Origin: Macrostomum lignano
Taxonomy: Eukaryota
Length of the DNA stretch: 42,225 nucleotides
Direction of reading: 5' to 3'
Assembly (NCBI GenBank): GCA_002269645.1
Contig: NIVC01004553.1
Location: 1 to 42,225, forward strand
How positions within the stretch are numbered: the stretch's first letter is position 1; each line of letters opens with the position of its first letter. This document shows, one piece after another, positions 6,149-42,225 of this stretch. The position numbers and the translations under genes were made by a program. The notes below the pieces were generated by a model. It saw only the letters and a program-made list of their open reading frames with translations. It had not been told where the DNA came from and searched no databases.

Positions 6149-6881
6149 GGCTATGAGCATCTGGAGCTGGCATGCAGTTGCTAGGCTATACGCTGGGTTA
6201 TGAACTGGGCTATGAGCATCTGACACTGGCAATAGCTGGCCTATGAGCTGGGTTCTGAGCTGGGATATGAGCTGGGCTATGAGCACCTGACACAGGCAGT
6301 AGCTGGGCTATGAGCTGGGAAATGATTATCTGACACTGGCAGTAGGTGGGCTATGAGTTGGGCTATGAGCTGGGCTATGAGCATCTGGCACTGGCATTAG
6401 CTGGGTTATGGGCATCTGACACAGGCAGTAGCAGACCTATGAGCTGGGCTATGAGCATCTGGCACTGGCATTAGCTGGGTTATGGGCATCTGACACAGGC
6501 AGTAGCAGACCTATGAGCTGGGCTATGAGCATCTGGCACCGGCATTAGCTGGGTTATGGGCATCTGACACAGGCAGTAGCAGACCTATGAGCTGGGCTAT
6601 GAGCATCTGACACAGGCAGTAGCTGGGCTATGAGCTGGGCTATGAGCATCTGTCACAGGCAGTATCAGACGTATGAGCTGGTCTATGAGCATCTGGCACT
6701 GGCAAAGCTGGGTTATGGGCATCTGACACAGGCAGTAGCAGGCCTATGAGCTTTGCTATGAGCATCTGACACAGGCAGTAGCAGGCCTATGAGCTTTGCT
6801 ATGGGCATCTGACACAGGCAGTAGCAGGCCTATGAGCTTTGATATGAGCATCTGTCACAGGCAGTAGCAGGCCTATGAGCA
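6149..6881. repeat. Compound minisatellite of TATGAGCTGGGC and TATGAGCATCTGACACAGGCAGTAGC-type units, with a 74-bp higher-order period in its centre
   Basis: Tandem units are directly visible. TATGGGCATCTGACAC recurs at 6407, 6481 and 6555. Confidence 0.9.
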
Positions 6882-7226: not shown

Positions 7227-7374
7227 TGCGCTCCCATTAATGTGAGTCCGGGCTCCTTTAGGGTTCGCGGCGTAGCAGCGCATTCGTGCGGGTCACGTGG
7301 ACAAAACCTGACGAAAAGTTGCGCAGAAAGAAACATTATCGCTGCGACACACCTAGGCGGGTGGCCTATAAATA
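7227..7374 (+). promoter_or_regulatory. Putative promoter of the metallothionein-like gene: MRE core TGCGCTC (7227-7233), E-box CACGTG (7294-7299), TATAAATA (7367-7374)
   Basis: Matches to the TGCRCNC, USF-type E-box and TATA consensus 100-250 nt upstream of ATG 7471. These short motifs can occur by chance. Confidence 0.5.
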
Positions 7375-7470
7375 ACCCCCCAGCTGGGCTGGCGGAGAAG
7401 CCCGAAGCGATAGGAAAAAGAGGATTCTCCGATCTGAGCTCTGCGACCCTTATTGTTTAACCTTTTAACA

Positions 7471-8778
7471 ATGGACAAGCCAAGTTGCCCCACATGCAAG
7501 TGCGAGAACTGCAAATGCGAGAACTGCAAGTGTGAGAACTGCAAGTGCGAAAACTGCAAGTGCAAGAACTGCAAGTGCGAGAACTGCAAATGCGAGAACT
7601 GCAAGTGCGAGAACTGCAAGTGCGAGAACTGCAAGTGCGAGAACTGCAAGTGCAAAGACTGCAAATGCGAGAACTGCAAGTGCGAGAACTGCAAGTGTAA
7701 AGACTGCAAGTGCAAAGACTGCAAGTGCGAGAACTGCAAGTGTAAAGACTGCAAGTGTAAAGATTGCAAGTGCGAGAACTGCAAGTGCAAAGACTGCAAA
7801 TGCGAGAACTGCAAGTGCGAGAACTGCAAGTGCAAAGACTGCAAGTGCGAGAACTGCAAGTGCAAAGACTGCAAGTGTAAAGATTGCAAGTGCGAGAACT
7901 GCAAGTGCAAAGACTGCAAATGCGAGAACTGCAAGTGCGAGAACTGCAAGTGCAAAGACTGCAAGTGCGAGAACTGCAAGTGCAAAGACTGCAAGTGTAA
8001 AGACTGCAAATGCGAGAACTGCAAATGCGAGAACTGCAAATGCGAGAACTGCAAATGCGAGAACTGCAAGTGCAAAGACTGCAAATGCGAGAACTGCAAA
8101 TGCAAGAACTGCAAATGCGAGAACTGCAAGTGCGAGAACTGCAAGTGCAAAGACTGCAAATGCGAGAACTGCAAATGCGAGAACTGCAAGTGCGAGAACT
8201 GCAAGTGCGAGAACTGCAAGTGCAAAGACTGCAAGTGCAAAGACTGCAAATGCGAGAACTGCAAGTACAAAGACTGCAAGTGCAAAGACTGCAAATGCGA
8301 GAACTGCAAGTACAAAGACTGCAAGTACAAAGACTGCAAGTGCAAAGACTGCAAATGCGAGAACTGCAAGTACAAAGACTGCAAGTACAAAGACTGCAAG
8401 TGCAAAGACTGCAAGTGCAAAGACTGCAAATGCGAGAACTGCAAGTGCGAGAACTGCAAGTGCAAAGACTGCAAGTGCAAAGACTGCAAGTGCGAGAACT
8501 GCAAGTGCAAAGACTGCAAGTGCAAAGACTGCAAGTGCAAAGACTGCAAATGCGAGAACTGCAAATGCGAGAACTGAAAATGCGAGAACTGCAAGTGCAA
8601 AGACTGCAAATGCGAGAACTGCAAGTGTAAAGACTGCAAGTGCAAAGACTGCAAATGCGAGAACTGCAAGTGTAAAGACTGCAAGTGCAAAGACTGCAAG
8701 TGCAAAGACTGCAAATGCGAGAACTGCAAGTGCGAGAACTGCAAGTGCGAGAATTGCAACAGCGCGTCCTGCAACTAG
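7471..8778 (+). CDS. Giant tandem-repeat metallothionein-like protein (MDKPSCPT + 84 x CKCEN/CKCKD + CNSASCN); in-frame TGA at 8575-8577
   Basis: 15-bp unit from 7495 to 8754 with no indels. Variation is mostly synonymous (AAG/AAA, TGC/TGT, GAC/GAT). Unique N- and C-terminal caps. TATA upstream and AATAAA near 8906. Confidence 0.75.
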
Positions 8779-11700
8779 CAGCCGCAGTTTTCCTGCAGTT
8801 TGAGCTGAGGAAGTTGCCGGAACATTGAGGCATAACTAGCGTAACTAAAGTTTGATAAATGTGTATCCCAACCCTAAAGCAATTTTTTTATCGTGAATTG
8901 TTTTAAATAAATAACTGCATGCTATGAAATCTGTTTGCATGAATCACAAACTTGATTGCTCAATTTTATTGATTTTTCGCGCGAGGTTTATGGCACTCAT
9001 TCTAATAGAACTCTCGAGATTTGTAATTAATTTTGCACGAACAATAAACGCGTATGATTAAAGCCAGATGTAAAAGAAAACAAGATTCTTTCATTTTATG
9101 ATCAGTAATTGAAGAATTTTCGGTAATGTTAACTATGATCGAAAGTTTCATTGGAAGAGCAGACCAAGCAGAATAGTGGTTGTTTTGTACCCTCGATCGT
9201 AGCTATACAAAAATTGAGTTTAGTACTGTAGATTAACCTCGACCTTATACTTTCGTCCAGTTCGCATTAGATTCTACGACAATGCATTCAATGAGTGGCA
9301 TAGATCAAGTAGTATGAAAAATATGAAATCTGCATGTATGTTCTTCGGCCTTATTAGCTTATAGTGTAAGCTTACATAAGCTTGTAAGTTCGGCCTTATA
9401 TTATAAACGCGAAACGAAAATCAGTGCATATAAATATGCTTTATATACAGTCATCAAAACTCAGTTCAGGGGCGTAAATTTACTTTAAAAGGCTGGAAAT
9501 TTAGGATTCTACATATAGGATATCCAACTAAAAGTTACCGTTTCAGGACGCAACACTCGGCGATGCAGTATGCAACGAAGCAACGAAGCACCGATGCAAC
9601 GAAGATGCAGTAGTCATAGGAAATGAAATCGTTTGTCCACAAACTATTGTGTATTTTGTGCCCGTGTTTGTGTCATTGTTACAGTGGTGTCTGCTGTAAA
9701 ACAAATGACAAAGTGAGTTCATAAATGGTTCATGATGTAGCTTAAATTGAGTATACTCAACGTAGAGAACGACCATTAAGTTATTCGTTCAGTCATTTAC
9801 TTAAGACATCAAAAAAGAAGTTCTTTACACCCATAAAAGCTGTTTATTTTAATTCCTTTTCTTCTGCTAGTTCATCTAGTTCTAGTTTCATAATTGCTTT
9901 TCGTTATTTTGTAGGTTATCGTGTTTATTAAAAATAAAAGCATTATAACAAAATATTTAATCATTCAGAGAGAAAATAATCACTTATGAAAGATCCGAAA
10001 AACTTCATTTATCTGCTTACGGTACTTGTTTAAACCGTTATTATTCGATATTCAAACTGGAAAAGAAGCGTACGAGCTATATAGCAAGAAAGCAACAATG
10101 GGGAAGCTCTCTCTCGCGCCATAATTATCACAGAACCTGCACTAATATGATTCTGGCTATGCTACTCATGCTAGAGCATATATAGTTTGCTTCTACTCTA
10201 GGCCCTTAATTTATCTGTCTAATGTTCAGGACTTAATTCTATTTTATTAGTCCCATGACTCGCATCCATGATCCATCTCATTCTAGGCTAGGGCATAATA
10301 TCTTAATCTCCATGATATAATTTTCTTTTGAGTTGTTTTTTTCTGGCAGAAATGGGCCTAGCACTATAGCAGCCTAAGATAAAGGAAACCAAAATGTAAA
10401 CATTAATTTAGTCATCAATTGACAGTAGTCTATAGGCAAGCCAGGCCACAAACAATGTGGTGTGGCTGGTGCACAGTCATTTTGTCTGCTACCTTTTCGT
10501 CTGCCAGCAGACAAAACAACTTCTAAAAAAGAAAAAGAAAAATATAGGGCAATTTTCCTCTTTCATTTGTTAAATTAATTTTTCATTTTAACATGAACAA
10601 TACTGACTTAAAATGACAAAAAACGATAACAATATGATCCCTGGCCCCACCTCCATCCAATGATGATAATGCATTTGTTTTCCTGTTGCAGAGCTTATTC
10701 ATAATAAACAAAAAGGTCAAGTTAAATTTTTTGGGTCTTTTGGGTAATATTTTGAATTTTTAGATATACTTGACATTGACACTTGTACTTTTAAAAACTG
10801 ATTCAATATCTTTACTTTAAATATTTTTAAGAATAAGATATACAGTCCAGATATTTCCTTTTAATATTAACATTGTATTTAATATTTAACATATTTTTAT
10901 AATTATATATTAATTACATATATATTATTTGAAATTATATATTACGTTACAGGGCTGATTGTTTTCTCTTGAATGAAAATTTCACCATTAAGCCACCAAG
11001 TTGTTACAGGCATGTTTCCTACATGCTAGGAAATCTCATAAACTGCCATCAAAGTTGTGATAGGCTTTATTTCTGTCTCTTAAATGTTTTATTGTTGCCG
11101 CCAAGACTATTCTATTATGAATTTATTTTCCTAGAATAAGTCTAGGAAAATTAAAGTTTTTAGTATAAGTCTAATTATTCGTCTAAGTGTATTTATCTAA
11201 TAATCTAAGCATAGGTCAGAGTATTAGTCTGCAAATTATTGAGTATCATTCTTGGTATATGTTCTCACAGGTAACATTCTTACTATTATTCTGGTAGTGT
11301 TCTTATTGTTATTCTGGTACTCGTAGTGTTCTCACTATTATTCTTGTAGCATTCTTACTATTATTCTGGCCTAAGTAGTATATAGGCCTAGTCTACTGGT
11401 ATATATACTGGATGTATGTTCTCTCCAGTCCTGAGCGTTACTAGGATTAGAGGGTCATGGCCCTTTATATGTTTTGAGATCTACTTCGTATTTCTTCTCT
11501 TTCCAACATTCTATTTCTCAGTAGTATATACTATATGCTCTTCCTTCTATTTCACTTCACTTAGAAAATGAATTAACATGGAAAAACACTTCTTGAAATA
11601 TTTCTTTGGAATTCACTAAAAGATTTCTCAACTAACCATTTAGTTGAAGGCTGATTTAAAGCTCCAACAAACATGCCTCTCCTCGCCCAAAATTCATGTC

Positions 11701-14303: not shown

Positions 14304-15281
14304 TGCACTCATGATTCACAATTCCATATATTTAAATAAATAAAGAAAATAAAAACTGTACAAGGCAATAGATGAATGGGTTCAGTCCGGTCAATAATTG
14401 TACATTAAGACACAAAAATAAATTAAATTATTAGACCATTAAAAAAACCTAAAAACACAGAGAAGACAATTTTTGTTAAAACAAACTCTTCAGTCATATT
14501 AGACAACTTATTTATGTATGAAAGTAGCAAGTCTCTTGTTCAATGGCTAAAAACTCACACTAGTAGAACAAAAATACTGCATTGAAAAATAAGTATAGTA
14601 CAATGTAGTCCTTCAAAAACAATTTAAAATTTAGCTCTTGGCTGTGTAATACACAATTATTGCATGTTTTTATAATTTTATACTATGGGATGAGCGTTTT
14701 TGTTTTCTACATGGTTTCTGGCAACAGAGTGTTCTTGGTAGTTTCTGTGGAAAATTTATCAAAAAAGCAACTGAAAGGTATAGACAAAAATGATATTATA
14801 ATAATTGGCTTGGTGCCAAAAATATCATTTTGTTTTCATTAATGTCCGGAGGGAAGAGGCGGAGACGGAGCAATTTTGATTTTGAAATTTTGAGCGGCAG
14901 CAGCGCCCTCTCGCGCTGAGCTGAGCAACATATAAATAAAGCACACGCACACTAGGGGTTAGGGGTGCTAGTCAGATCACGTACGTACAGTGCGTAAAAA
15001 AGGTTTAAGGCGATAAAAAAGGGGTGCAGCGAGGCAGGTCGCTCCGCCATTAAAACCGGGTAAAGCCCACTTGCTTTACCCGCCCAGTACTAGGCAGAAA
15101 TATAAGCATCTACACAGCACCCGAAGCACTTTTTTTCAATTTTTCATGGCAATAATTATGATTGGGTTGCAGAATAACTGTTTGAATGACACAGTTCGAA
15201 TGATGAAGTAAAATAACGCTTAAGTTAATACAAGACATATTGCGCATCTCTTTTCATGCTTGATTGCGCAAGCCCTCAGCC

Positions 15282-15710
15282 ATGTCTTACATGCTGCCCC
15301 ACCTCACCAATGGCTGGCAGGTGGACCAGGCCATTCTGTCCGAGGAGGACCGGCTCGTGATTATTCGGTTCGGACACGACTGGGATCCCGCCTGTATGGT
15401 CATGGACGAGACTCTGTTTAAAGTGGCCGAGAAGGTTAAAAACTTTGCCGTCATTTACCTTGTTGACATTCAGAAGGTGCCAAACTTCAACAAGATGTAC
15501 GAACTGTACGACCCCTGCACGGTGATGTTCTTCTACAGAAACAAGCACATCATGATCGACCTGGGCACCGGAAATAATAACAAAATAAACTGGCCTGTCG
15601 AGGACACTGGCGAGTTTATCGACATAGTCGAGACAGTGTTCAGGGGCGCCCGCAAAGGCCGGGGTCTGGTGGTGTCGCCCAAGGATTATTCTACCAAATA
15701 TCGATACTAA
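15282..15710 (+). CDS. TXNL4A: U5 snRNP thioredoxin-like protein DIM1 (142 aa), intronless
   Basis: Recognisable DIM1 sequence MSYMLPHL..GWQVDQAILSEEDRLVIIRFG...VVSPKDYSTKYRY. AG acceptor 2 nt upstream of the ATG. AATAAA at 15827. Confidence 0.98.
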   Translation: MSYMLPHLTNGWQVDQAILSEEDRLVIIRFGHDWDPACMVMDETLFKVAEKVKNFAVIYLVDIQKVPNFNKMYELYDPCTVMFFYRNKHIMIDLGTGNNNKINWPVEDTGEFIDIVETVFRGARKGRGLVVSPKDYSTKYRY

Positions 15711-15955
15711 ATTAACTGCTAGTGCTTTTGACTGCTAGTGCGTGTCTAAACTCTCTGATCTGTACATAGCTGTTCGGCTACTGTTTAACTATGATGTGTT
15801 GTGCTCTGCTCATGCGCTATCCTCCTAATAAATGCTTTTAATAAGATTGTACCCAGCAAATGTGTCTTCTGCATTCATTTATTATATCGTAGCTCGCCTT
15901 AGTTTGGCAGTTTAACCTTTTAGGAAAATAGAATGTATTGTAGACAATATGTGTT

Positions 15956-15966
15956 TTTATTGCATG
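15956..15966 (+). other. Relic 3' end of a flatworm-type spliced leader (TTTATTGCATG)
   Basis: Occupies exactly the position where the second RPS20 copy has the acceptor TTTCCAG. Flatworm SLs end in AUG (Schistosoma ...TTGTTGCATG; I recall Macrostomum ...AATTTATTGCATG, to be verified). Confidence 0.7.
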
Positions 15967-16041
15967 CTGGCTCAGCGCTGCTTTACCTGAGCATCTCGGC
16001 CAGTCACTCTCGATAATCCAGTCAGCCTAGCAACAGTTGCC

Positions 16042-16392
16042 ATGGACGCCAAGGACGGCAAGGAGGAGCTGCAGTCGGCGCAGGTTCACCGGATCCGCAT
16101 CACGCTGACGTCAAAGAATGTCCGCAGCCTGGAGAAGGTGTGCGCCGACCTGATCAAGGGCGCCAAAGACAAGAACCTGCCAGTGAAGGGGCCGGTGCGA
16201 ATGCCGACGAAGGTGCTGAGCCTCACGACCCGCAAGACTCCGTGCGGCGAGGGCTCGAAGACGTGGGACCGGTACCGCCTGCGGCTGCACAAGCGGCTCA
16301 TCGACCTGCAGTCGCCCGCCGAGACCGTCAAGCAGATCACCAGCATCAGCATCGAGCCGGAGGTCGAGGTCGAGGTCACGGTGGCCAAGTGA
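16042..16392 (+). CDS. RPS20: 40S ribosomal protein S20 (uS10), copy 1, probable retrocopy
   Basis: [23 protein letters not shown]...GPVRMPTK...[15 protein letters not shown]...HKRLIDL; 116 aa, intronless. AATAAA at 16472. Confidence 0.98.
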
Positions 16393-17212
16393 AGAGGCGA
16401 TGTGTGTGTTCCAGGTTTTGCGCTGACTGCTTCCGCTGGTCTGCTTGTGTGTCCGCGGCCTACGGGCTGTGAATAAATTAGAGGGCTGAGAGAGTCGCAT
16501 TTCGGCTGCCTTGGACAAACTGCAGGGCTCTTCCGTCTTCTTTTTTGCCGCTGACTGCGGCAGCTTTCTTAGCGTCATTTGCATCTGGGGGGTGGGGGGA
16601 ATCAGGCGGCAGTTATATCTAGGTGAATGGGCTGGATTTTCTATCTGCATTTCATACTTGCAGCAAGCAAGGTGCACCGCTCGCTGCCAAACTTCAAACT
16701 GGTCGCCCCCCCTCCTATTGCAGGAAATGGAGCTAAAAATAACGCCAGATTCTGTCTGGCCCCCTCCCGGGTCCGCCCGGCCGCTATTTAATTGTTTGGC
16801 TTGATGGGTTGGCAAAAATGCATTCGGTGCGGTGGGCATTGGATTGGCCAGGCGCGTCTTACGCTAATAGGGAGCTGCGTTTAGCGCAGATAGGCATTGG
16901 GGTCTGGGGTGTTTCACAAAGCAAAGTTTGATCTTATAGGTTCCAACTTGGGCCCGAGGTTAGTATGTGGCTGTGTCATCACTAAACTAAAAATTGATCT
17001 TGGCTGGGATCCAAGTTAGATGCGACTCAAAGAGAGAAACGCTCGAACTTAAGAATGAAGTGTTTCACGACAGAAGATAGTCTGTGGTAAAAAACCCTTA
17101 TGTCCGTCCCAACTTTAGGGCACATACGGAGTTGTCCTAAGTCGCATCAAACGGATAGCTGATATATGTCTCAGCAAATTCACGGTAAAGCAGTATGATC
17201 GTTATGTAAATA

Positions 17213-17357
17213 ATAAACGCCGTTTAATTCACATTCTGTGGTTGGAATGTCCGAGGCTGCGTTTAATGGTCTCGAAGCGAGCGTAGCGAGCCGAGGACCA
17301 TTGATTGCAGCCGAGGATATTCTAACCATAGACTATGATGAATTAAACGGCGTTTAT
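17213..17357. mobile_element. 145-bp palindromic (fold-back) element with central CGAAGCGAGCGTAGCGAGCCG motif
   Basis: Perfect outer arms ATAAACGCCGTTTAATTCA / TGAATTAAACGGCGTTTAT and imperfect inner arms. Classification as a mobile element is inference. Confidence 0.6.
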
Positions 17358-17361
17358 CATA

Positions 17362-17766
17362 TATAGTATTTGTCATGCTGTCTCAGCCTGGAGACATCCA
17401 AACTCAGCCGGCCCATCTCGACAGTGCGATTTTTTACGTAAGCCAGTCAAGTTTTACCATAGACATGCTTCTTGGGGCCATGCTATCTCAGCCTGGGACA
17501 TGCAATCTCAGCCACTTTTCAGATGCTATGTCAAGCTGTCCGTGGCTTAGTCTGTGATCGAAGCAAATGAAACAGAATGAGAGCAACAAGCGACGAAGAC
17601 GAAGCGAGAAGTGTTTGCAATTGAAATCTATATTGGCTGAGATAGCATGGCCTTAAGAAGCATGTCTATGGTAAAAGTCGACTAGCTCGAGCCAAAAAAC
17701 GCATTGCGGAATGGGACTGGCTGAGTTTGGATGTCTCTGGGCTGGGATGGCATGACAAATACTATA
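17362..17766. mobile_element. MITE, ~400 bp, ~130-bp imperfect terminal inverted repeats, TA (or ATAT) target duplication
   Basis: TATAGTATTTGTCATGC...CCATGCTATCTCAGCC is mirrored by GGCTGAGATAGCATGG...GCATGACAAATACTATA. No coding capacity. Confidence 0.85.
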
Positions 17767-18418
17767 TTAAATTCGACTGCTCCTGATTTCGAGGAGATTA
17801 TATGATATAATATCCTAGTTTTTGTTAAAAATTAATTATTCGTGGAATTATAATTGGTTAATAGTCATAGATAATGCGTTAGAAATATACTATGACGGTC
17901 TGTCAAACCAAAGTATTGAAGTATGATTATTCAGATTCATTTTATACTACTGCACTATCAGTATAGAGAAGTCAGAATTAGGGTTATTGTAGTGATGCGT
18001 CTAGCTACTAGCTTCATTCACGTTTGTGCCAAAAACAGGTAAAGCTGAACATTGCAAACTGTTCACGGCAGGTATAATGGCTTAGAGAGGTAGATTTTAT
18101 GTTATAAGGATAAACATGCCTTTTCGGGAGCTATTTTCATAGATTTATTCAAATGGCTAAATTGAATTGATAAAACGTTTTTGCGTGAACGTTTGATTGA
18201 TTCTATTATTGAATTTTCAGTCTAATTATTGAATATTTTCCTTTCAAAATGTGCACTTCCCTACTATAGTAGTGTCTGTCTCTTAGATAGATGTGTGAGC
18301 TTGTAATCTATGAAACTAATTATAATTGCTACCTGCTTTCCAGCTGGCTCAGCGCTGCTTCACCTGAGCATCTCGGCCAGTCACTCTCGATAATCCAGTC
18401 AGCCTAGCAACAGTTGCC

Positions 18419-18769
18419 ATGGACGCCAAGGACGGCAAGGAGGAGCTGCAGTCGGCGCAGGTTCACCGGATCCGCATCACGCTGACGTCAAAGAATGTCC
18501 GCAGCCTGGAGAAGGTGTGCGCCGACCTGATCAAGGGCGCCAAAGACAAGAACCTGCCAGTGAAGGGGCCGGTGCGAATGCCGACGAAGGTGCTGAGCCT
18601 CACGACCCGCAAGACTCCGTGCGGCGAGGGCTCGAAGACGTGGGACCGGTACCGCCTGCGGCTGCACAAGCGGCTTATCGACCTGCAGTCGCCCGCCGAG
18701 ACCGTCAAGCAGATCACCAGCATCAGCATCGAGCCGGAGGTCGAGGTCGAGGTCACGGTGGCCAAGTGA
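18419..18769 (+). CDS. RPS20: 40S ribosomal protein S20 (uS10), copy 2, probable parent gene
   Basis: Same protein as copy 1; I see one synonymous difference (CTC/CTT). Acceptor TTTCCAG at 18337-18343. AATAAA at 18853. Confidence 0.98.
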
Positions 18770-19157
18770 AGAGGCAATGTGTGCGTGTGTTCCAGGTTTT
18801 GCGCTGACTGCTTCCGCTGGTCTGCTTGTGTGTCCGGGGCCTACGGGCTGTGAATAAATTAGAGGGCTGAGTCAGTTTCGACTTGCTTGGAATTGATTTC
18901 TCGTTGCCTTTCTTTTTTCTCTAATGTCTGCGCAAATACTTAGTTATGGTTTTTTAAGCTTTTAGTGTTAAGGCTTTTATTTTAGTAGTCTACTAATCTG
19001 TCAGTAGTAATTTAAGTAGCAGAAATAAAATCTGCATCCGCATCGATTCCAGGTATCGCAGGATGTGAAACGCGACCCAGGCGGCACCAAAAGCAGCCAG
19101 AGGCGCAAGCAACAGAAACAGCAACAGAAGCAGCAGCAGCAACAGCAAGAGGTCGCT

Positions 19158-21717
19158 ATGCGCGAATGCAAGGTCTTCGACGTCGTCGATGAGTTGAACA
19201 ACGGACTCGAAGACCTGCCGGTGGTCTGCTTAAAGTCCCTGCCGCAGTCGCACCCGTTCTCAGAGCGCCGGGTGCCGTTGGGCCAGGAGGCGGTGAAGAT
19301 CGGCCGGTCCGTGGCCAAGTCCAAGCCCTCCATCGACAATGCCATATTCGACTGCAAGGTGCTCAGCCGGAACCACGCCCTGCTGTGGTATGAGTCCGGC
19401 CAGTTCTGGCTGAAGGACACAAAAAGCAGCAATGGAACTTACGTTAACAATCAGCGGCTTGGCAAAGGCAACGAGGAAAGCCCGCCTCGCCGACTGCTTA
19501 GCGGCGACATCCTCCAGTTCGGCGTTGAAGTGGTGGAAAATTCTAAGAAGGTCACCCACGGCTGCGTCATAGCCTCCGTGTTTCTGTACCACGCAGACGG
19601 CAGCGAGGACAAGCGGCCGGACTCCGCCTCGTTGAGCTCCGCTGCCTCCGCGTTTGTGCCGCCCGGTTCCGAAGCAGACGCCGAGGCGGTGGCAGCCGCG
19701 GCAGCATCAGCGGCGGCCGCCAACACGGTGAGCCAGGAGCAGGTGCACCAGCTCAGCCAGTACCTGCAGGAGGCGCTGCACAGGGAGCGTCTGCTCACCG
19801 TTAAGCTGGACAAATTCCGCGAACTTCTTGACTCCATAGCTGGCGTTAGCGCGGGCGCCTGGACGACCGTGCTGGATCAGGAGCAGCTGACGCAGCGGCT
19901 TGAGCTACTTGAAGCCCAGGTAGCCGCTGCCGGTGTCAACTCTGACAGCGATGCTGACGACCGCGACAGAGCCGCTGCTGGCGACTCGCTGTCGGCTGCG
20001 GTTCGTGCCGGTGCCGCTGCCGAGGAGACGCTGAAGCGGCGCCTAGAAACCGCGCTAGTCGAGTGCGGCGCCGCCGTCCATAGAGCCGGCGAGCTTGAGC
20101 GGGCCTGGCGCGACAGCCAAGACGAGTGCCAGCACCTGCGGGCGGAGCGCGACCGCACCGAGGACCGGCTGCGCGAGCTCGGCGAGCGGCTGGCGCAGGA
20201 GTTAGATGAGCTGGGCTCCCAGCTGGCCAAAGAGATGGAGCGCAATTCTTCTCTTAAGTCACGAATTAAAGAACTGGGCGAGGCTCTGAACGACGGTCAG
20301 CGAGAGCCGCAGTCTGGGCGGAGTGGAGCCGTCGAACGAGCGGACGCCGAAGCGCAAACTGTGGCTGACTCGGGTGCCCCGGCGCCGCAAACAGGGCCGC
20401 AGGCGGACTTGTTGAAGGCGCAACTGCAGGTCGGTCTTAAACTCGATTATTGTTAATAATTCGTTTTATGCAGATTTATGCAGATTTGGCGATCTGCCAA
20501 AAGTCACACTCATTAAGGCCAACGCCAAGGCACACTGTGCATGACTGAATCTCAGTCACACTCATTAAGGCCAACGCCAAGGCACACTGTGCATGACTGA
20601 CTCTCAGTCACACTCATTAAGGCCAACGCCAATGCACACTGTGTATGACTGACTCTCAGTCACACTCATTAAGGCCAACGCCAAGGCACACTGTGCATGA
20701 CTGACTCTCAGTCACACTCATTAAGGTCAACGCCAAGGCACACTGTGCATGACTGACTCTCAGTCACACTCATTAAGGTCAACGCCAAGGCACACTGTGC
20801 ATGACTGACTCTCAGTCACACTCATTAAGGTCAACGCCAAGGCACACTGTGCGTGACTGAATCGCCTCAGAGCCCTCGCCTCTGAATGAAACTGTGAATG
20901 TTAATTCCATGTTTTGACCCATGGCATAGATATTGAACAGTTTTAGTGCAGTGTATGTACAAGTTCTCAGGACCTATTTACTCAATATCACCTTTCTTAA
21001 TGATGCAGGGATTATCAGTATGGGAGCAGCTAGTGTAACACCGCAAATGCATTTAACCCTCAGGCGTGCAAGACTCAGCTGCGCGACCAACAGGCGTCTC
21101 TGGACGCCTCCTCGGCCAAAGTCGACGACCTCCACACCCGGCTGGAGTCGGCTCTGTCCTGCCTCAACCAGCTGGAGACTCGAATGCTCGAGCTGGAGGC
21201 CCAGAAGCAGCTCCGCCAGCAGCGGCCGCGCCAGCAGCTGCCTCGGCCGCCATCGCCCGGCTCGAATGGCCAGCAGAACGCTGCCTGGCTGCTCGACCTC
21301 CTTCGCTGCCTTCGAGCCGATCCGATCGCCGTAGAGAAAGCAGAGCGCCAGCTGCTGCAGCCGCTGCTGAAGTCGTCGCCGACGCTACAGGCCGCTTTGC
21401 AGGAAGTCGACGCCGAAACTGCGCACCTTCGAGCCAGCCTGGACTCCGAGGCCGACAGGCGGCGCCAGCTTCTGGCCGACTGCGACAGCTTAGCGGCGCG
21501 GATTACCGACGCCGAGCTGACTGCCCTCGCCGGCCGTGACGAGCGCGCCAACCTAGAGCAGCGGCGTCGCGACCTCCGGGCCGCCTGCGACCGCCAGCTG
21601 GCCGACTGCCGCGCCGAGGCCCGGGCCGCCGCCAACCGCAGCCGCCTGCTGCTCGCCGCCGGGGTCCTGCCGGTGCTGCTGGCCCTGCTGACCGGCGTTT
21701 TCTGGATCGCCTCGTAG
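19158..21717 (+). CDS. SLMAP: Sarcolemmal membrane-associated protein (FHA domain, coiled coil, C-terminal tail anchor)
   Basis: FHA motifs KIGRS...NAIFDCKVLSRNHA...DTKSSNGTYVN...GDILQFGV..VTHGC. Exons 19158-20429 and 21064-21717 with a phase-0 GT-AG intron. Terminal TM LLLAAGVLPVLLALLTGVFWIAS. The frame is open further upstream, to 19053. Confidence 0.92.
20502..20862. repeat. Intronic minisatellite, ~7 x 52 bp
   Basis: AGTCACACTCATTAAGGCCAACGCCAAGGCACACTGTGCATGACTGACTCTC at 20502, 20554, 20606 and onward. Confidence 0.95.
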
Positions 21718-22864
21718 CTTCCGCGGCCCGCCAGTCAGTCAGAAATGTGCAGCACCTGCTAGCCCGCTGTGTCTCGCATTTCCCGCATGCACCCGCAATG
21801 CCCCCCCCCTGCCCCGACATCTCAACGCACTATAACAAGCGTTGCGTTGCGTTTCTTTTCTCTTGAGTATTGAGCACTGTACACACATGTACCGCAGATT
21901 CTGCGTCAATGCATTAGAGCATGAATAGAATAGCCACCAGAGCCTGTGCATGACCTGACCTCACCTGTTCATAAGCAGTCCCGGCCACTCCTTCTCAGTG
22001 AAATGAGCGCCGAGTTTTAGCACCGACTGCAGTCCACCGAGATCTGTTTTTTAAAGTCAGTACAGCGCCTGTCCGCACCAAACTTTCGTTGTTAATATCG
22101 TATTTCCATCTAGAATTGCTCCTTGTTGTACCTGTGTTTTCTTGTAAAACTTGATTGCTGAAATTGGCTATCTGAACTGCTGTTTGGCCAGCGGTTTCTC
22201 CGAGCTTGAATTGACAGCTTTTTTGTTTTTGTTTGCTTTTTTTCATTTGATCATCGTTCTACGGCAATTCCCGTTTGGCAGCTGGCATGGGATGATAAAT
22301 ATGATTATAGTGTACTTTTGGCGGCCTCTCTAATGACCTGTCCTGTGTGTATTCAGTCTGTCTCGATCATCACCATTCACTATTTCAGGACTTGCTCGGC
22401 TCGGCTTACCTGTATTGCGGTCCGTACTATGAAAGACTATGTGACTTATCCAATTTGTATGTTATATATAAGATAGATTTTCAGTGCCCTGAAACTCACC
22501 TATTGAAGTGTTTCATTCGACCTGCTGTACTGCATTGCCTCGCTGCGTGATACCCAGTGTCATTGATTTTTTGAGCCCTGTAAATCTCCATCAGTCTGTC
22601 TCTTGCGAGTACGTTTCACACCAAACACCCCCCCCCAGTGCAACCCCACAGAAACCCCACATTTATTGTCCACATTGCTCATCACCTACGACTAATAAAG
22701 TTGATGCGTTATCGTGTATGAAAAAGGCACTTTGGAGCGCTCTTAAAAACTTATCCAGTTGCAGAAGACCAATATCAGTCCTGTGCCCTGGGCTTAGGTC
22801 TGTCCGCACAGGCCAGTCGAGTTCTCTACCAGTATTTGAGTGGTCGCTGAAAGGAATTTGACTG

Positions 22865-22964
22865 AATGTCTGTCTGTCTGCCTGCCTGCCTGCCTGTCTG
22901 CCTGTCTGTCTTAGTGTCTGTCTGTCTGTCTGTGTCTGTCTGTCTGTTTTTCTGTGTGTCTGTG

Positions 22965-23055
<91 letters not shown>

Positions 23056-23104
23056 GCCTGCCTGCCTGTCTGCCTGTCTGTCTTAGTGTCTATCTGTCTG
23101 TCTG

Positions 23105-23143
<39 letters not shown>

Positions 23144-23158
23144 GTCTGTCTGTCTGTG

Positions 23159-23189
<31 letters not shown>

Positions 23190-23304
23190 TTTTCTGTCTG
23201 TCTGTCTGTCTGTCTGTGTCTGTGTCTGTCTGTCTTAGTGTCTGTCTGTCTGTCTGTCTGCCTGCCTGTCTGCCTGTCTGTCTTAGTGTCTGTCTGTCTG
23301 TCTG

Positions 23305-23341
<37 letters not shown>

Positions 23342-23362
23342 GTCTGTCTATCTGTCTGTCTG

Positions 23363-23401
<39 letters not shown>

Positions 23402-23514
23402 GTCTGTCTGTCTGTCTGTCTGTCTTAGTGTCTGTCTGTCTGTCTGTCTGTCTGTCTGCCTGCCTGTCTGCCTGCCTGTCTGCCTGTCTGTCTTAGTGTC
23501 TGTCTGTCTGTCTG

Positions 23515-23587
<73 letters not shown>

Positions 23588-23590
23588 TTT

Positions 23591-23625
<35 letters not shown>

Positions 23626-23700
23626 GTCTGTCTGTCTGTGTCTGTCTGTCTGTCTGTCTGTCTTAGTGTCTGTCTGTCTGTGTCTGTCTGCCTGCCTGCC
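22865..23700. repeat. (TCTG)n microsatellite with CCTG, TGTC and CTTAGTG variants
   Basis: Directly visible. The VCLS-repeat ORFs are artefacts. Confidence 0.97.
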
Positions 23701-24164
23701 TGTAGCTGCAGTCGTGAGAGGTGCGCGCGCGCATCTTTGATTAAGTAAAAGTTTTTTTCCTCTCTTTCTTTTTTGTTTTACCATTTTACTCTCCTTTGTT
23801 TCATTCAGCGCTGCCGGTCTTTCTTCTGTCAAGACCCCGACCCCTTCTTCCCTTGCCTACCCTGCCGCTTGTGTACCCTGCCGTTTTGGACAAGTTTTTT
23901 TTCATATTTTTCTACGTGACATAATTGCTTTAAATTTAGTTCTCACCTTCGATGTTGTATTGTATTGATTGCGATTTTTTACATTTAAAGTACAAGTGAA
24001 GAAGACTGAAAGAACGCGCTCTGTTGCTAGGCAGTTATCGTTATTATCACTGAGCTGTGCGAATTCGGCGTCTTGTATATTGCCAACTGGTGCAGAGCTT
24101 TGCCACACGAATCGGAATTGGGAATTTAGGAATCGGGTTCAGTATATTAAAAAATCAGGATTGC

Positions 24165-24480
24165 GATCAGTATATTTAGGAATCGGGATTGGGATCAGGA
24201 TATTTGGGGATCGGGATTGGGATAAGGATATTTGAGGATCAAGATTGGGATCAGGATACTTGGGGACCGGGATTGGGATCAGGATGCTTGGGGACCGGGA
24301 TTATCATCAGGATATTTAAGGATCGGGATTGGGATCAGGATACTTGGGGACCGGGATTGGGATCAGGATGCTTGGGGACCGGGATTATCATCAGGATATT
24401 TGAGGATCGGGATTGGGATCAGAATATTTGGTGATCAGGAATGGGATCAGGAGAATTCAGAAACAGGATTGGGATAAAAA
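24165..24480. repeat. 28-bp minisatellite GATCGGGATTGGGATCAGGATATTTGGG with an 84-bp (3-unit) higher-order duplication
   Basis: Tandem units are visible just upstream of Arp3. Confidence 0.9.
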
Positions 24481-24668
24481 GCTTCCTTAAGGCCAGAATC
24501 ATGGGGCTCGGTACTACCGGGATGAGGATCTCATGTTTAGTAGTTTTGTGACCTGGGTCTCAAAGATTCCCTAGAGTACATTCCCACAACTCAAAGCGGT
24601 CTGTGCAAAGCTATAAAAGTGGTACAAAAGCATGAAAACAAACATCTCCCCCCGCAGCTCCAGCAGCC

Positions 24669-25922
24669 ATGGCAGGCAGGCTTCCAGCGGTTGTCATTGA
24701 CAACGGCACCGGCTACTCCAAGATGGGCTACGCTGGCAACAGCGAGCCTCAGTTCATTATGCCCAGCTGCATCGGCATCAAGGAGGCTGCCAAAGTTGGC
24801 ACCAAGGAGTCCAGGCGCCTCGGCACCGGCCTGGATGATTTGAATTTCTACATCGGCGACGAGGCGCTGACGGTGGCCAGCAGCTACGCCACCAAGTGGC
24901 CGATCCGGCACGGCCAGGTGGACGACTGGGACCTGATGGAGCGCTTCTACGAGCAGGCCATCTTCAAGTACCTGCGCGCCGAGCCGGAAGATCACTACTT
25001 CCTGCTGACTGAGCCACCATTGAACACCCCGGAGAACCGGGAGTACACCGCCGAGATCATGTTCGAGACGTTCAACGTCCCTGGACTGTACATCGCTGTG
25101 CAGGCGGTGCTGGCCCTGGCCGCCAGCTGGACCACCAGGCCGGAGGGCGAGCGAACCCTCACCGGGGTTGTCATAGACTCCGGCGACGGTGTCACCCACG
25201 TCATCCCGGTGGCCGACGGCTACGTCATCGGCAGCTGCATTCAGCATATCCCCATCGCCGGCCGCGACATCACTTTCTTCATTCAGCAGCTGCTGCGCGA
25301 ACGCGAGGTGGGCATCCCGCCGGACATGAGCATGGACACCGCCAAGGCCATCAAGGAGCGCTACTGCTACGTGTGCCCGGACATCGCGAAGGAGTTCAAC
25401 AAGTACGACGCGGAGAGCTCCAAGTGGATTAAGACGTACACGAGCATCAACCCCATCAACAATGCCCCGTTCACTGTGGATGTCGGCTACGAGAGATTCT
25501 TGGCCCCCGAGATCTTCTTCCACCCGGAGTTTGCCAACCCGGACTTCCAGACTCCGCTGTCCGAAGCCGTGGACAACGTGATCCAGGCCTGCCCCATCGA
25601 CAACCGGCGCGGCCTGTACAAGAACATCGTGCTGAGCGGCGGCTCCAGCATGTTCAAAGACCTCGGCAAACGGCTGCAGCGCGACATCAAGCGAGCATCG
25701 GACAGCCGCCTGAAGGCTGTGGAGGCGTTCAGCGGCCAGAAGCCGACCCCAATCGAGGTGAACGTTTTCTCGCACGCCAAGCAGCGCTACGCTGTCTGGT
25801 TCGGCGGCTCCCTGGTGGCCTCCACCAACGAGTTCTACTCGGTGTCCCACACCAAAGAACAGTACATGGAATACGGAGCCAGCATCTGCCGACACAACCC
25901 GGTTTTCGGCGCCATGACCTGA
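24669..25922 (+). CDS. ACTR3: Actin-related protein 3 (417 aa), intronless
   Basis: [24 protein letters not shown]...[53 protein letters not shown]...[12 protein letters not shown]. Confidence 0.98.
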
Positions 25923-27391: not shown

Positions 27392-28181
<790 letters not shown>

Positions 28182-38180: not shown

Positions 38181-38459
38181 TAATTAAGCAATGCTTTAAA
38201 GCGGCCAATAGAGATTCAGTCGAACAGCCGACAGTTCCAAAAAAGAATCCCAGCTTGGATACCGGTACGAGCTACCAATTAGGAAAGCTCATCAGGCGAA
38301 ATGTATTTTAGAACCATGTACCCCATGCAGTCTGCGATGATCGATATACTCCCGATCTTTCATCCCCGATTAATTGTAATTCCTTGCTCGCCGTGCCCTA
38401 CTACCATTTGTTGTCTACTTGTCGTCTGTCAACCCTATAGTTTTCTAAGCTCCCATATG

Positions 38460-41400: not shown

Positions 41401-41505
41401 ACTTTGTTCGCTCCCAGGCCCTGCGGCGCGCCATCTGACGCGCCCTGCTCTAACTGTGACTGTGCATGCGGGGTCGCGTATTTTGTTGCTGTTGTTTGTT
41501 GTTGT
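38460..41505 (+). mobile_element. Near full-length non-LTR retrotransposon (single APE + RT ORF, RTE-like), multiple frameshifts, (GTT/TTG)n tail
   Basis: APE motifs LGTMNCRTL, LISLQEV, LAVLGDLNA. RT motifs IVPIPKK, EQNGFRP, FVDFRKAFDSV, GVLQGDTLAPFLF, YADD, FTYLGG. ORF from ATG 38544 to TGA 41438. The clade call is inference from the single ORF and microsatellite tail. Confidence 0.92.
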
Positions 41506-41830
41506 ACAACGCCGAGACCTGCTGGACCCTGACGGACACCTTGTTGGAGAGGCAACTGGAGGCTGAGCATGTGGCCATGCTGCGTGCGCGCGTTCGGAGT
41601 GAGCAGCAGTCCAGGCAGCAATTAAGACCAATATGCCACGCTCTACACAAGGGCGCGCCTGATGCGGCACGCCAGTCGAAGTCGTCGCAGGTCAGAATTG
41701 GTCGGTGGCCCGCTGCCCTGAGACGCTGCACGAAGTGCTGCGCTCAAACTGCAGGGACCGCGCAGCGAGGCCAAGGGCGAACGGCGAGATACCCTGACAG
41801 GCTTTTGCTGACGCTGATGCCCCCGGACCA
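41500..41830 (+). mobile_element. Decayed C-terminal fragment of an older related element
   Basis: LLYNAETCWTLTDTLLERQLE aligns with VLLYNVETWTLTATLERQLD; later LQGP..RGQGRTARYPDRLL aligns with LQGPFRRGQ... Confidence 0.75.
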
Positions 41831-42225
41831 AGCTGGCCGGATATGGGGTGTGACCCATATTATTAAGCAATAATAAGTTGTTATTATTGAGGAAACATTA
41901 AAACGCACTATCAAGTGGATCATTTACTGCTTATCTGTCATCATGCAGTCACCAATGACTAGATGTAGAGTATAGTGATGGCTAGTGATGGAATTCGTAG
42001 TGATGGCTTCGACTGTTAAGCAAAAGTGCCATCAAATGTATTTGACTTTGTGCCGATGCTGACCCAAAACTCTTTCTGTCCCAATTTGTTGAATCTACAT
42101 AAGCTCTGCTGTGCTTCTCTTTAATTATTCAGTTTTAAAATGATTATGAAAAAAAATCATAAATTAACTCATAATCAATTGATATCATATCGCTAGTAAA
42201 ATGGACTCTTAAAGGTACACAATTA

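What the first reader, a model, noticed from the sequence alone, without database searches (positions are those of the whole stretch)
7471..8778. Giant repeat metallothionein-like protein: 84 CKCEN/CKCKD pentapeptides, about 165 Cys
Seen: a 15-bp unit with no frame-breaking indel over 1260 bp, third-position synonymous variation, only 5 Cys-to-Tyr changes, unique caps (MDKPSCPT..., ...CNSASCN-stop), and TATA, MRE core, E-box and AATAAA in gene-like positions. Known: CxC/CKC motifs, Lys/Cys richness and near-absence of aromatics typify metallothioneins, and modular elongated MTs exist in ciliates, snails and tunicates, though mostly with longer domain repeats. Inference: a metal sponge built by minisatellite expansion, possibly length-polymorphic. 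A Cys-rich structural or cross-linking protein is an alternative.
Basis: partly seen in the sequence, partly recalled or inferred. Interest (0 to 1): 0.8.

Follow-up and report, generated by a model that had tools for sequence, protein, structure and literature searches.

The report
Giant cysteine-lysine pentapeptide repeat gene candidate
A flatworm (Macrostomum lignano) scaffold carries an unannotated 1.3-kb stretch of 84 in-frame 15-base repeats that would encode a protein of about 38% cysteine resembling an enormous metal-binding metallothionein, but it has one premature stop codon, no relatives and no proof yet that it is expressed.

Summary
The repeat is real: 84 copies of a 15-bp unit at 7495-8754, with no indels. 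From the ATG at 7471 it reads MDKPSCPT-(CKCEN/CKCKD)n-CNSASCN-stop.

The window is a whole scaffold of the flatworm Macrostomum lignano (NIVC01004553.1). A second copy of the locus, 95-97.5% identical, carries the same array end, C-terminal cap and stop, but a different unit mix.

Evidence for coding is indirect:
- Codon adaptation is 0.81 in the Cys frame, equal to the ribosomal protein gene RPS20, against 0.19-0.38 in the other five frames (p about 0.01-0.05).
- All five third codon positions vary (p about 0.02).
- The ATG has a good Kozak context and a TATA box lies at -104.

Evidence against or neutral: the stop codon; four other frames are fully open; the genome is rich in minisatellites; the MRE, E-box and AATAAA are at chance level; and there are no homologues among 1.84 billion representative proteins. 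The missing GenBank gene model is uninformative, because repeat-overlapping transcripts were filtered out.

I estimate about 0.65 that it is coding and about 0.42 that it is a metallothionein-like metal binder. No Pfam metallothionein model is matched. Public M. lignano RNA-seq would settle the coding question.

The parts
7367..7373 (+). TATA-like box (TATAAAT), 104 nt upstream of the ATG
   Evidence: It is the only TATAWAW on the + strand between 4989 and 9429. There are 45 in the whole window, mostly in AT-rich stretches. Function is inferred, not shown.
7378..7384 (+). Possible alternative 5' end: a pyrimidine run followed by CAG (ccccccag|CTGGGC), resembling the acceptor-like tttccag|CTGGCT upstream of RPS20 copy b
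   Evidence: Sequence. M. lignano trans-splices about 30% of its genes at [T/C]TNCAG-type acceptors (PMC8629364). The strict motif is not matched here, so this is inference only.
7385..7470 (+). Putative 5' UTR with no upstream ATG; last in-frame stop at 7435-7437
   Evidence: no ATG between 7367 and 7470; upstream in-frame TGA at 7435.
7471..7494 (+). Start codon and unique N-terminal cap MDKPSCPT (context aacaATGg)
7495..8754 (+). Array of 84 15-bp units encoding C-K-C-(E/K)-(N/D), in 12 DNA unit types
   Evidence: There are 0 indels. Codon adaptation index is 0.81 and GC3 is 0.82 in this frame.
7750..7989 (+). Two identical 120-bp (8-unit) higher-order blocks, marking recent block duplication inside the array
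   Evidence: unit string HAFBAFAF occurs at unit indices 17-24 and 25-32.
8260..8394 (+). Zone holding the five Cys-to-Tyr units (CKYKD), arranged as a duplicated block pattern
   Evidence: J units at indices 51, 54, 55, 58 and 59. The AlphaFold2 confidence dip and the sub-threshold Pfam PF25296 match fall here.
8575..8577 (+). In-frame TGA (from TGC by C-to-A, the only transversion in the array); it truncates the ORF to 368 aa
8755..8778 (+). Degenerate last unit and C-terminal cap CNSASCN plus the TAG stop; identical in the second genomic copy
8906..8911 (+). AATAAA 128 nt after the TAG, conserved in the second copy but lying in AT-rich DNA

Best explanation
An unannotated, single-exon gene of Macrostomum lignano encodes a cytosolic, very Cys- and Lys-rich polypeptide. 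It consists of MDKPSCPT, then tens of C-K-C-x-x pentapeptides, then CNSASCN.

The gene grew by in-frame expansion of a 15-bp coding minisatellite, in single units and in 45-120-bp blocks. It still turns over quickly: the two genomic copies differ in unit composition.

The likely mode of action is metallothionein-like. Alternating CxC and CxxC thiols form metal-thiolate clusters with Zn, Cd or Cu, and the neighbouring lysines offset the cluster charge. By mammalian stoichiometry (20 Cys per 7 divalent ions), capacity would be roughly 47-58 divalent ions per chain.

The copy in this window carries a premature TGA. It would therefore yield a 368-aa, 140-Cys product, unless that base is an assembly or polishing error.

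Shown: the repeat anatomy, the frame-specific codon bias, the second copy, and the absence of relatives. Inferred: transcription, translation and metal binding.
For: - Frame-specific codon bias. CAI is 0.81 and GC3 0.82 in the Cys frame. The window's reference genes have GC3 0.81, with CAI 0.816 for RPS20 and 0.754 for Arp3. The other five frames score 0.19-0.38. The major unit uses only the most-used codon for each residue (CAI 1.0). Random 15-mers reach CAI 0.81 in a fixed frame with p about 0.01, and in any of six frames with p about 0.05.
- Third-position variation. Variable unit positions are 3, 6, 8, 9, 10, 12, 13 and 15, so all five third positions vary. The hypergeometric chance is 120/6435 = 0.019 (my arithmetic). 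Amino-acid changes are limited to E/K, N/D, five C-to-Y and one stop.
- No indels. There are none in 1260 bp. By contrast, 878 aligned bases of 3' flank differ between the two copies by 6 gap events.
- Start region. The ATG is 24 nt before the array, with A at -3 and G at +4. There is no upstream ATG, an in-frame stop lies at 7435, and TATAAAT lies at -104. The gene is on the same strand as every recognised gene between 3 and 30 kb.
- Composition. 38% Cys, 29% Lys, no His, Phe or Trp, and no signal peptide. Net K-(D+E) is +35 to +41.
- Second copy. The locus is kept in a second copy with an identical C-cap and stop, and 36 of 36 Cys codons intact in the 18 visible units.
- Precedent. The giant modular metallothionein OdiMT2 of Oikopleura has 399 aa and 123 Cys, with 3-7 repeat units depending on the population (PMC8283569).
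- Missing gene model is uninformative. The GenBank annotation excluded transcripts that overlap repeat annotations (PMC5730564).
Against: - An in-frame TGA at 8575-8577 interrupts the ORF. The Cys frame is one of only two frames with any stop, while four others are fully open.
- No transcript, protein or annotation evidence is available here. The exact products are not on record.
- No similar protein was found among 5.8 billion clusters. Among 1.84 billion representatives, the top hits are unrelated five-residue-period low-complexity repeats with at most one Cys per five residues.
- No Pfam metallothionein model reaches threshold. PF12749 scores 10-15 bits against a cut-off of 22, and PF00131 does not appear.
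- The genome is 15% simple and tandem repeats, and the window has about 15 separate arrays. Other arrays also sit inside ATG-started ORFs, for example 29775-30290 and 22866-23666.
- The MRE, E-box and AATAAA are at chance level.
- Frame preservation by whole-unit gain and loss is mechanical and does not prove selection.
- The two genomic copies are too similar (2-5% divergence) to show purifying selection on the caps.
Confidence: 0.42

Rival explanations
1. It is a non-coding minisatellite. The 15-bp array is one of the many tandem repeats of this genome, and its Cys-rich translation, nearby ATG and TATA-like box are coincidences.
For: - Tandem and simple repeats make up 15% of the genome, and Tandem Repeats Finder returns 42 rows in this window.
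- Four other frames are open across the array, and the Cys frame has a stop.
- Other arrays lie within ATG-started ORFs.
- There are no homologues, no annotated gene, and the promoter motifs are at chance level.
- Whole-unit slippage keeps the frame automatically.
Against: - Codon adaptation of 0.81 occurs in exactly the frame that has the ATG (p about 0.01).
- All five third positions vary (p about 0.02).
- There are no indels over 1260 bp, whereas the other arrays longer than 600 bp in the window show 4-13% indels.
- The start context is good and a TATA box lies in otherwise TATA-free DNA.
- The Cys pattern continues into both unique caps (SCPTCKC and CNSASC).
Confidence: 0.33
2. It is a real gene, but the product is structural or redox-active rather than a metal store. 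It would be an intracellular disulfide cross-linker, comparable to ultra-high-sulfur keratin-associated proteins or sperm cysteine-rich proteins, perhaps used in the stylet, sperm or another hardened cell product of the worm.
For: - The coding evidence is the same as for the best explanation.
- A 43-50 kDa size and a regular pentapeptide period are unusual for metallothioneins but typical of cross-linking matrix proteins (my own knowledge).
- Lack of a signal peptide fits an intracellular hardened structure.
- No metallothionein family model is matched.
Against: - There are no CC pairs and no Pro, Gly or Ser-rich context of the keratin-associated type, and no Pfam Keratin_B2 match.
- About 48% of residues are charged (Lys, Glu, Asp), with Lys next to almost every Cys and alternating CxC/CxxC spacing. 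This is the metallothionein pattern (and my own knowledge).
Confidence: 0.15
3. The polypeptide folds as a long beta-solenoid related to pentapeptide-repeat proteins, with the two Cys of each unit pointing into the core.
For: - The AlphaFold2 single-sequence model has mean pLDDT 87.8 and pTM 0.66, with strands at a five-residue period.
- There are weak matches to Pentapeptide families: PF13599 at 18.9 bits and PF00805 at 13 bits.
- PDB entry 6fls, a pentapeptide-repeat protein, matches at E = 0.022.
Against: - All Pfam scores are below their cut-offs of 20-38 bits.
- Foldseek against the PDB gives no match better than E = 2.8, with TM-scores of at most 0.16.
- The A(D/N)LXX consensus, with a bulky central residue, is not met.
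Confidence: 0.04
4. The gene is on the minus strand: the ORF 8833-7457 (ATG, 458 aa, CSSRTCSLCT repeats) is the real product.
For: This ORF starts with ATG and has no stop across the whole array.
Against: - CAI is 0.35 and GC3 0.39 in that frame, against 0.81 and 0.82 in the + Cys frame.
- Unit variation there falls mostly on first and second codon positions.
- All recognised neighbouring genes are on the + strand.
Confidence: 0.02

Closest known systems
Oikopleura dioica OdiMT2 (multi-modular metallothionein)
   Same: It is very large for a metallothionein (399 aa, 123 Cys, 31%). It was built by tandem repetition inside one gene, the repeat number differs between populations (3-7 units), and it has a short unique N-terminal peptide (PMC8283569).
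   Different: - The repeat unit there is a pair of domains (t-12C plus 12C), six such pairs making up most of the 399-aa protein, each with a defined 12-Cys pattern. That gene has introns. Here the unit is 5 residues (15 bp), the gene is a single exon, and Cys is 38%.
- No sequence similarity was detected.
- Metal binding is demonstrated for OdiMT2 and untested here.
Tremella mesenterica metallothionein ('longest metallothionein currently known' in 2016)
   Same: It is another unusually long, repeat-built metallothionein, known to me only from the reference title cited in PMC8283569.
   Different: It is a fungal protein with longer repeat segments. I did not read the paper or compare the sequences.
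Classical metallothioneins with CKC motifs (vertebrate CKCKECKC segment; ciliate copper metallothioneins)
   Same: They share CxC and CxxC spacing, Lys next to Cys, absence of aromatic residues and an MD(x)P-type N-terminus. This resemblance is recalled from my own knowledge and is a lead, not a test.
   Different: - Those proteins have 25-190 residues and non-periodic Cys patterns.
- Their Pfam models are not matched: PF00131 gives no hit and PF12749 scores 10-15 bits against a cut-off of 22.
Ultra-high-sulfur keratin-associated proteins and sperm cysteine-rich proteins
   Same: They are cytosolic, lack a signal peptide, have 30-40% Cys and use pentapeptide periodicity (my own knowledge).
   Different: - Those proteins use CC pairs with Pro, Ser, Gly and Gln and act through disulfides.
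- Here there are no CC pairs, no Pro in the repeats, and about 48% charged residues.
- No Pfam keratin family match was found.
Short (CKCEN)3-5 runs in small Cys-rich ORFs of metagenomic contigs
   Same: The motif is identical, for example MLKSCKNPNCKCENCKCENCKCKNCDC, MKMEDCKCENCKCKDCKCDGCGCSAK, and a 104-aa secreted protein with five CKCEN units.
   Different: These have only 3-5 units. They lie on low-GC (24-40%) contigs that look prokaryotic or viral, and they lack the caps. Convergence is the likely explanation. Their function is unknown.

Membership tests
Metallothionein (operational definition) | High Cys content (about 15-35%) arranged as CxC, CxxC or CC motifs | tested here: met
   38% Cys in strictly alternating CxC and CxxC spacing.
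Metallothionein (operational definition) | Few or no aromatic residues and no His | tested here: met
   0 Phe, Trp or His; 5 Tyr, all arising from Cys-to-Tyr changes in one zone.
Metallothionein (operational definition) | Low molecular weight (usually under 10 kDa) | tested here: not met
   42.8 kDa to the TGA, or 50.4 kDa if read through. Multi-modular exceptions such as the 399-aa OdiMT2 exist.
Metallothionein (operational definition) | Binds metal ions in thiolate clusters | not testable with these tools
   This needs recombinant protein with ICP and ESI-MS analysis, as was done for OdiMT2.
Established metallothionein sequence families (Pfam PF00131, PF12749 and others) | Score at or above the family gathering threshold | tested here: not met
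   PF12749 scores 10.5-15.2 bits against a cut-off of 22. No other metallothionein model was reported even at E up to 10.
Metal-responsive gene (MTF-1/MRE control) | Clustered MRE cores (TGCRCNC) in the proximal promoter | tested here: inconclusive
   One core at 7227. The background is 1.07 per kb in the window, so this is the chance expectation.
Protein-coding gene | Uninterrupted ORF from start to stop | tested here: not met
   TGA at 8575-8577 splits the reading frame into 368 aa plus a further 66 codons.
Protein-coding gene | Host-like codon usage restricted to one frame | tested here: met
   CAI 0.81 and GC3 0.82 in the Cys frame, against 0.19-0.38 elsewhere. The simulated p is about 0.01.
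Protein-coding gene | Transcript or protein evidence | not testable with these tools
   No exact product is on record. The GenBank annotation filtered out repeat-overlapping transcripts.
Pentapeptide-repeat proteins (Pfam PF00805, PF13599) | A(D/N)LXX consensus and a score above the family threshold | tested here: not met
   13-18.9 bits against cut-offs of 20.2-38. Foldseek against the PDB finds no significant match. The AlphaFold2 solenoid is unreliable for perfect repeats.
High-sulfur keratin-associated proteins | CC-containing pentapeptides (CCxPx) and a Pfam Keratin_B2 match | tested here: not met
   There is no CC dipeptide and no Pro in the repeats. No keratin family appears in the Pfam output.

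The most novel reading that the evidence does not exclude
A hypervariable coding minisatellite encodes the most cysteine-rich and one of the largest metallothionein-like proteins known. It would have 140-166 thiols, enough for about 50 divalent or up to about 100 monovalent metal ions per chain. Its unit number and unit type change fast enough to differ between the two recently duplicated copies of the locus. This would give the flatworm a metal-buffering capacity that is tuned by repeat slippage rather than by gene duplication.
Probability: 0.3. Interest if true: 0.75.

Novelty: new variant of a known kind. Interest (0 to 1): 0.5.

Why it matters
If it is expressed, this would be a metallothionein-like protein built from a five-residue unit rather than from folded Cys domains. 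It would show that a simple coding minisatellite can create and resize a metal sponge.

It would also be the first candidate of this kind I could find for Macrostomum. A review of this marine toxicology model reports lethality only above 330 µM cadmium but already above 10 µM copper, and it never mentions metallothionein.

The case also shows how repeat-masking rules in genome annotation can hide real genes.

Tried and rejected
- **Word-indexed protein search.** No hit at E <= 0.001.
- **Exhaustive phmmer search.** It gave 1404 hits at E <= 0.001. The 12 listed proteins I inspected, including most of those with the highest identity, are unrelated five-residue-period repeats (ENPKI, KYENG, ENFKP, VECEN). 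None has two Cys per unit, and maximum identity is 49%.
- **Pfam.** Only sub-threshold matches driven by periodicity: PF25296 'Decapeptide' at 41.6 bits against a cut-off of 45, the Pentapeptide families, and Metallothio_Euk.
- **PDB sequence search.** Nothing meaningful.
- **Structure.** AlphaFold2 gave a confident beta-solenoid. Foldseek found no PDB match, and the literature shows this is a known artefact for perfect repeats. I rejected the model as evidence.
- **Selenocysteine or recoded TGA.** There is no SECIS or other Rfam hit, and Arp3 uses TGA as its stop. Rejected.
- **Literature.** No paper prints the repeat. Nothing was found on a Macrostomum metallothionein. A first search for 'CKCEN' returned only noise.
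- **Organism identification.** Searching for the SRA run number failed. The SLMAP-like protein solved it.
- **Second copy, 5' half.** I could not fetch it. Look-ups of DIM1 variants were not on record, and the RPS20 look-up returns only the downstream copy.
- **Older paralogous FHA locus (53% identity).** It has no array.
- **Antisense ORFs.** Rejected on codon usage.

Full report
**What is there.** Tandem Repeats Finder reports an array at 7495-8759 with period 15, 84.3 copies, 85% matches and 0% indels. Read from the ATG at 7471, the frame gives:
- the N-terminal cap MDKPSCPT;
- 84 pentapeptide units: 44 CKCEN, 32 CKCKD, 5 CKYKD, 2 CKCKN and 1 *KCEN;
- a degenerate last unit and cap, CNSASCN;
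- the stop TAG at 8776-8778.

This TGC-to-TGA change is the only transversion in the array, and it ends the intact ORF at 368 aa with 140 Cys.

TGA is a true stop in this genome. The Arp3 gene ends on TGA at the conserved C-terminus, where a congener uses TAA. No SECIS or any other Rfam family is present.

**Where it comes from.** An SLMAP-like FHA protein encoded at 19155-20453 is 100% identical to BOX15_Mlig003602g1 of Macrostomum lignano. The contig carrying it is 42,225 bp long. The window is therefore the whole scaffold NIVC01004553.1 of assembly GCA_002269645.1.

Neighbouring + strand genes are DIM1, two tandem RPS20 genes, the FHA gene, Arp3 and an RNA polymerase I A49-like gene. The assembly was made from PacBio reads with Canu and polished with Pilon. 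Simple and tandem repeats make up 15% of the genome. About 180 Mb of the assembly lies in duplicated blocks that are at least 95% identical (PMC5730564).

**Is it more than a chance ORF?** ORF openness is worthless as evidence. Four of the other five frames have no stop across the array. Other arrays in the window also sit inside ATG-started ORFs.

The promoter-style motifs add little:
- The MRE core occurs at 1.07 per kb across the window, so one copy in the 590 bp scanned upstream of the ATG is the chance expectation.
- The AATAAA lies in AT-rich DNA.

Three partly independent signals do point to the + Cys frame.
- **Codon usage.** I built a reference from 1517 codons of the window's recognised genes (GC3 0.81).
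  - The Cys frame has CAI 0.81 and GC3 0.82, equal to RPS20 (0.816) and above Arp3 (0.754).
  - The other five frames score 0.19-0.38, including the antisense frame that shares its third positions (0.38).
  - The major unit has CAI 1.0.
  - Random 15-mers reach 0.81 in a fixed frame with p about 0.01, and in any frame with p about 0.05.
- **Pattern of variation.** The variable unit positions are 3, 6, 8, 9, 10, 12, 13 and 15, so all five third positions vary. The hypergeometric chance is 0.019 (my arithmetic). Replacements are restricted to E/K, N/D, C-to-Y and the one stop.
- **Start region.** The ATG is 24 nt before the array, with A at -3 and G at +4. There is no upstream ATG, an in-frame stop lies at 7435, and TATAAAT lies at -104 in a stretch otherwise free of TATA motifs.

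The absence of indels over 1260 bp is mildly supportive. The other arrays longer than 600 bp in the window show 4-13% indels. The 3' flank shows 6 gap events in 878 columns between the two genomic copies. However, whole-unit slippage preserves the frame mechanically, so this does not prove selection.

**A second copy.** Scaffold NIVC01000704.1 carries the same gene order at 95-97.5% nucleotide identity. The fetched locus L011 starts inside a homologous array, and shows the following:
- 18.4 units, with 96% matches and no indels;
- 16 CKCEN and 2 CKCDN units, with no CKCKD units and no stop;
- the same terminal GAGAAT unit;
- an identical CNSASCN-TAG cap;
- the conserved AATAAA.

In the window, the last 18 units are a CKCEN/CKCKD mixture that includes the TGA unit. 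The array interior therefore turns over quickly while its edges stay fixed.

The two copies are too similar to demonstrate purifying selection on the caps. I could not retrieve the 5' part of the second array. An older paralogous FHA locus (53% identity) has no such array.

**Relatives and families.**
- No protein scored E <= 0.001 among the word-sharing candidates from 5.8 billion clusters.
- An exhaustive phmmer search of 1.84 billion representatives returned 1404 low-complexity matches. The 12 I inspected are unrelated five-residue-period repeats with at most one Cys per unit.
- Pfam gives only sub-threshold matches: PF25296 at 41.6 bits against 45, Pentapeptide families at 13-19 bits, and Metallothio_Euk at 10-15 bits against 22.
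- No paper prints the repeat.
- A metagenome scan found the same motif only as 3-5 units inside small Cys-rich ORFs on contigs that look prokaryotic or viral. Convergence is the likely explanation.

No gene is annotated at the array. This is uninformative, because the GenBank annotation deliberately excluded transcripts overlapping repeat annotations (PMC5730564).

**Structure.** AlphaFold2 without an alignment gave a confident beta-solenoid (mean pLDDT 87.8). Foldseek found nothing better than E = 2.8 in the PDB. AlphaFold2 is documented to produce confident but unrealistic solenoids for perfect repeats (PMC11795689). I do not use the model as evidence.

**How it most likely works.** The best-supported reading is an unannotated single-exon gene. 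Its 5' end forms either at a TATA-driven start near 7397-7400 or at an acceptor-like ccccccag at 7384. About 30% of M. lignano genes are trans-spliced (PMC8629364).

The product has the following properties:
- no signal peptide;
- 38% Cys and 29% Lys;
- no His, Phe or Trp;
- alternating CxC and CxxC spacing;
- net K-(D+E) of +35 to +41.

These are the compositional hallmarks of metallothioneins. At the mammalian ratio of 20 Cys to 7 divalent ions (established knowledge), the chain could hold about 47-58 ions. Metal binding, inducibility and expression are all inferred.

A structural disulfide cross-linker, for example in the intracellularly formed stylet or in sperm, is the main functional rival. 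A non-coding minisatellite is the main overall rival.

My estimates are about 0.65 that it is, or recently was, coding, and about 0.42 that it is a metallothionein-like metal binder.

**Comparison with known systems.** The closest functional analogue is Oikopleura OdiMT2, with 399 aa, 123 Cys and 3-7 repeat units depending on the population (PMC8283569). It differs in three ways:
- its repeat units are pairs of 12-Cys domains;
- its gene has introns;
- its metal binding has been demonstrated.

Here the unit is five residues encoded by a minisatellite. The operational metallothionein criteria are met for Cys content, motif spacing and lack of aromatic residues. They are not met for size, and not for any sequence family. 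Metal binding is untestable here. I therefore describe the protein as metallothionein-like and do not call it a member of a metallothionein family.

**Verdict.** If the gene is real, it is a new variant of a known kind. Existing M. lignano expression data would decide the coding question in minutes.

Noticed in passing
window 1-42225; L011 (NIVC01000704.1:259031-279381, reversed): The window is an entire scaffold (NIVC01004553.1) of the Macrostomum lignano Mlig_3_7 assembly. A second scaffold carries the same gene order at 95-97.5% identity. This fits the duplicated large chromosome described for the DV1 line.
   Followed up: yes
window 16042-16392 and 18419-18769: Two tandem RPS20 genes encode identical 116-aa proteins. 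About 90 nt upstream of each ATG is also conserved. The second scaffold has the same pair.
   Followed up: partly
window 22867-23703 and 27393-28179: Two (TGTC)n arrays of about 800 bp each (roughly 200 copies), in the same orientation, bracket the single-ORF Arp3 gene (24669-25922). Each yields a long spurious Cys/Leu/Ser/Val ORF.
   Followed up: no
window 15264-25922: DIM1, both RPS20 genes and Arp3 each lie in a single uninterrupted ORF, all on the + strand, although the genome-wide average is 4.9 introns per gene (PMC5730564). This may be an operon-like, trans-spliced cluster. The Arp3 mRNA of a congener (L009, SRR28338163) starts with the last 26 nt of the M. lignano spliced leader.
   Followed up: partly
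window 29775-30290: A 39-bp array (11.7 copies, 96% matches, 0 indels) lies in an ATG-started ORF with repeats of HSRVNCSSELLPN. Its codon adaptation is 0.62 with no stop. It may be another coding repeat, or an intronic repeat of the A49-like gene.
   Followed up: no
window 38300-41900: A non-LTR retrotransposon remnant has a reverse-transcriptase domain (PF00078 at 40041-40700). Its reading frame is split over several frames, so it appears degenerate.
   Followed up: no
L001, L002, L004, L008 (metagenome contigs): Small Cys-rich ORFs contain 3-5 CKCEN/CKCKN units. Examples are the 27-aa MLKSCKNPNCKCENCKCENCKCKNCDC, the 26-aa MKMEDCKCENCKCKDCKCDGCGCSAK, and a 104-aa protein with a signal peptide. 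They lie on low-GC contigs and could be unannotated microbial metal-binding peptides.
   Followed up: partly
window 6192-6880: A complex 31/43/74/159-bp nested minisatellite lies about 500 bp upstream of the putative promoter. It separates the candidate gene from the upstream membrane-protein ORF that ends at 6044.
   Followed up: no
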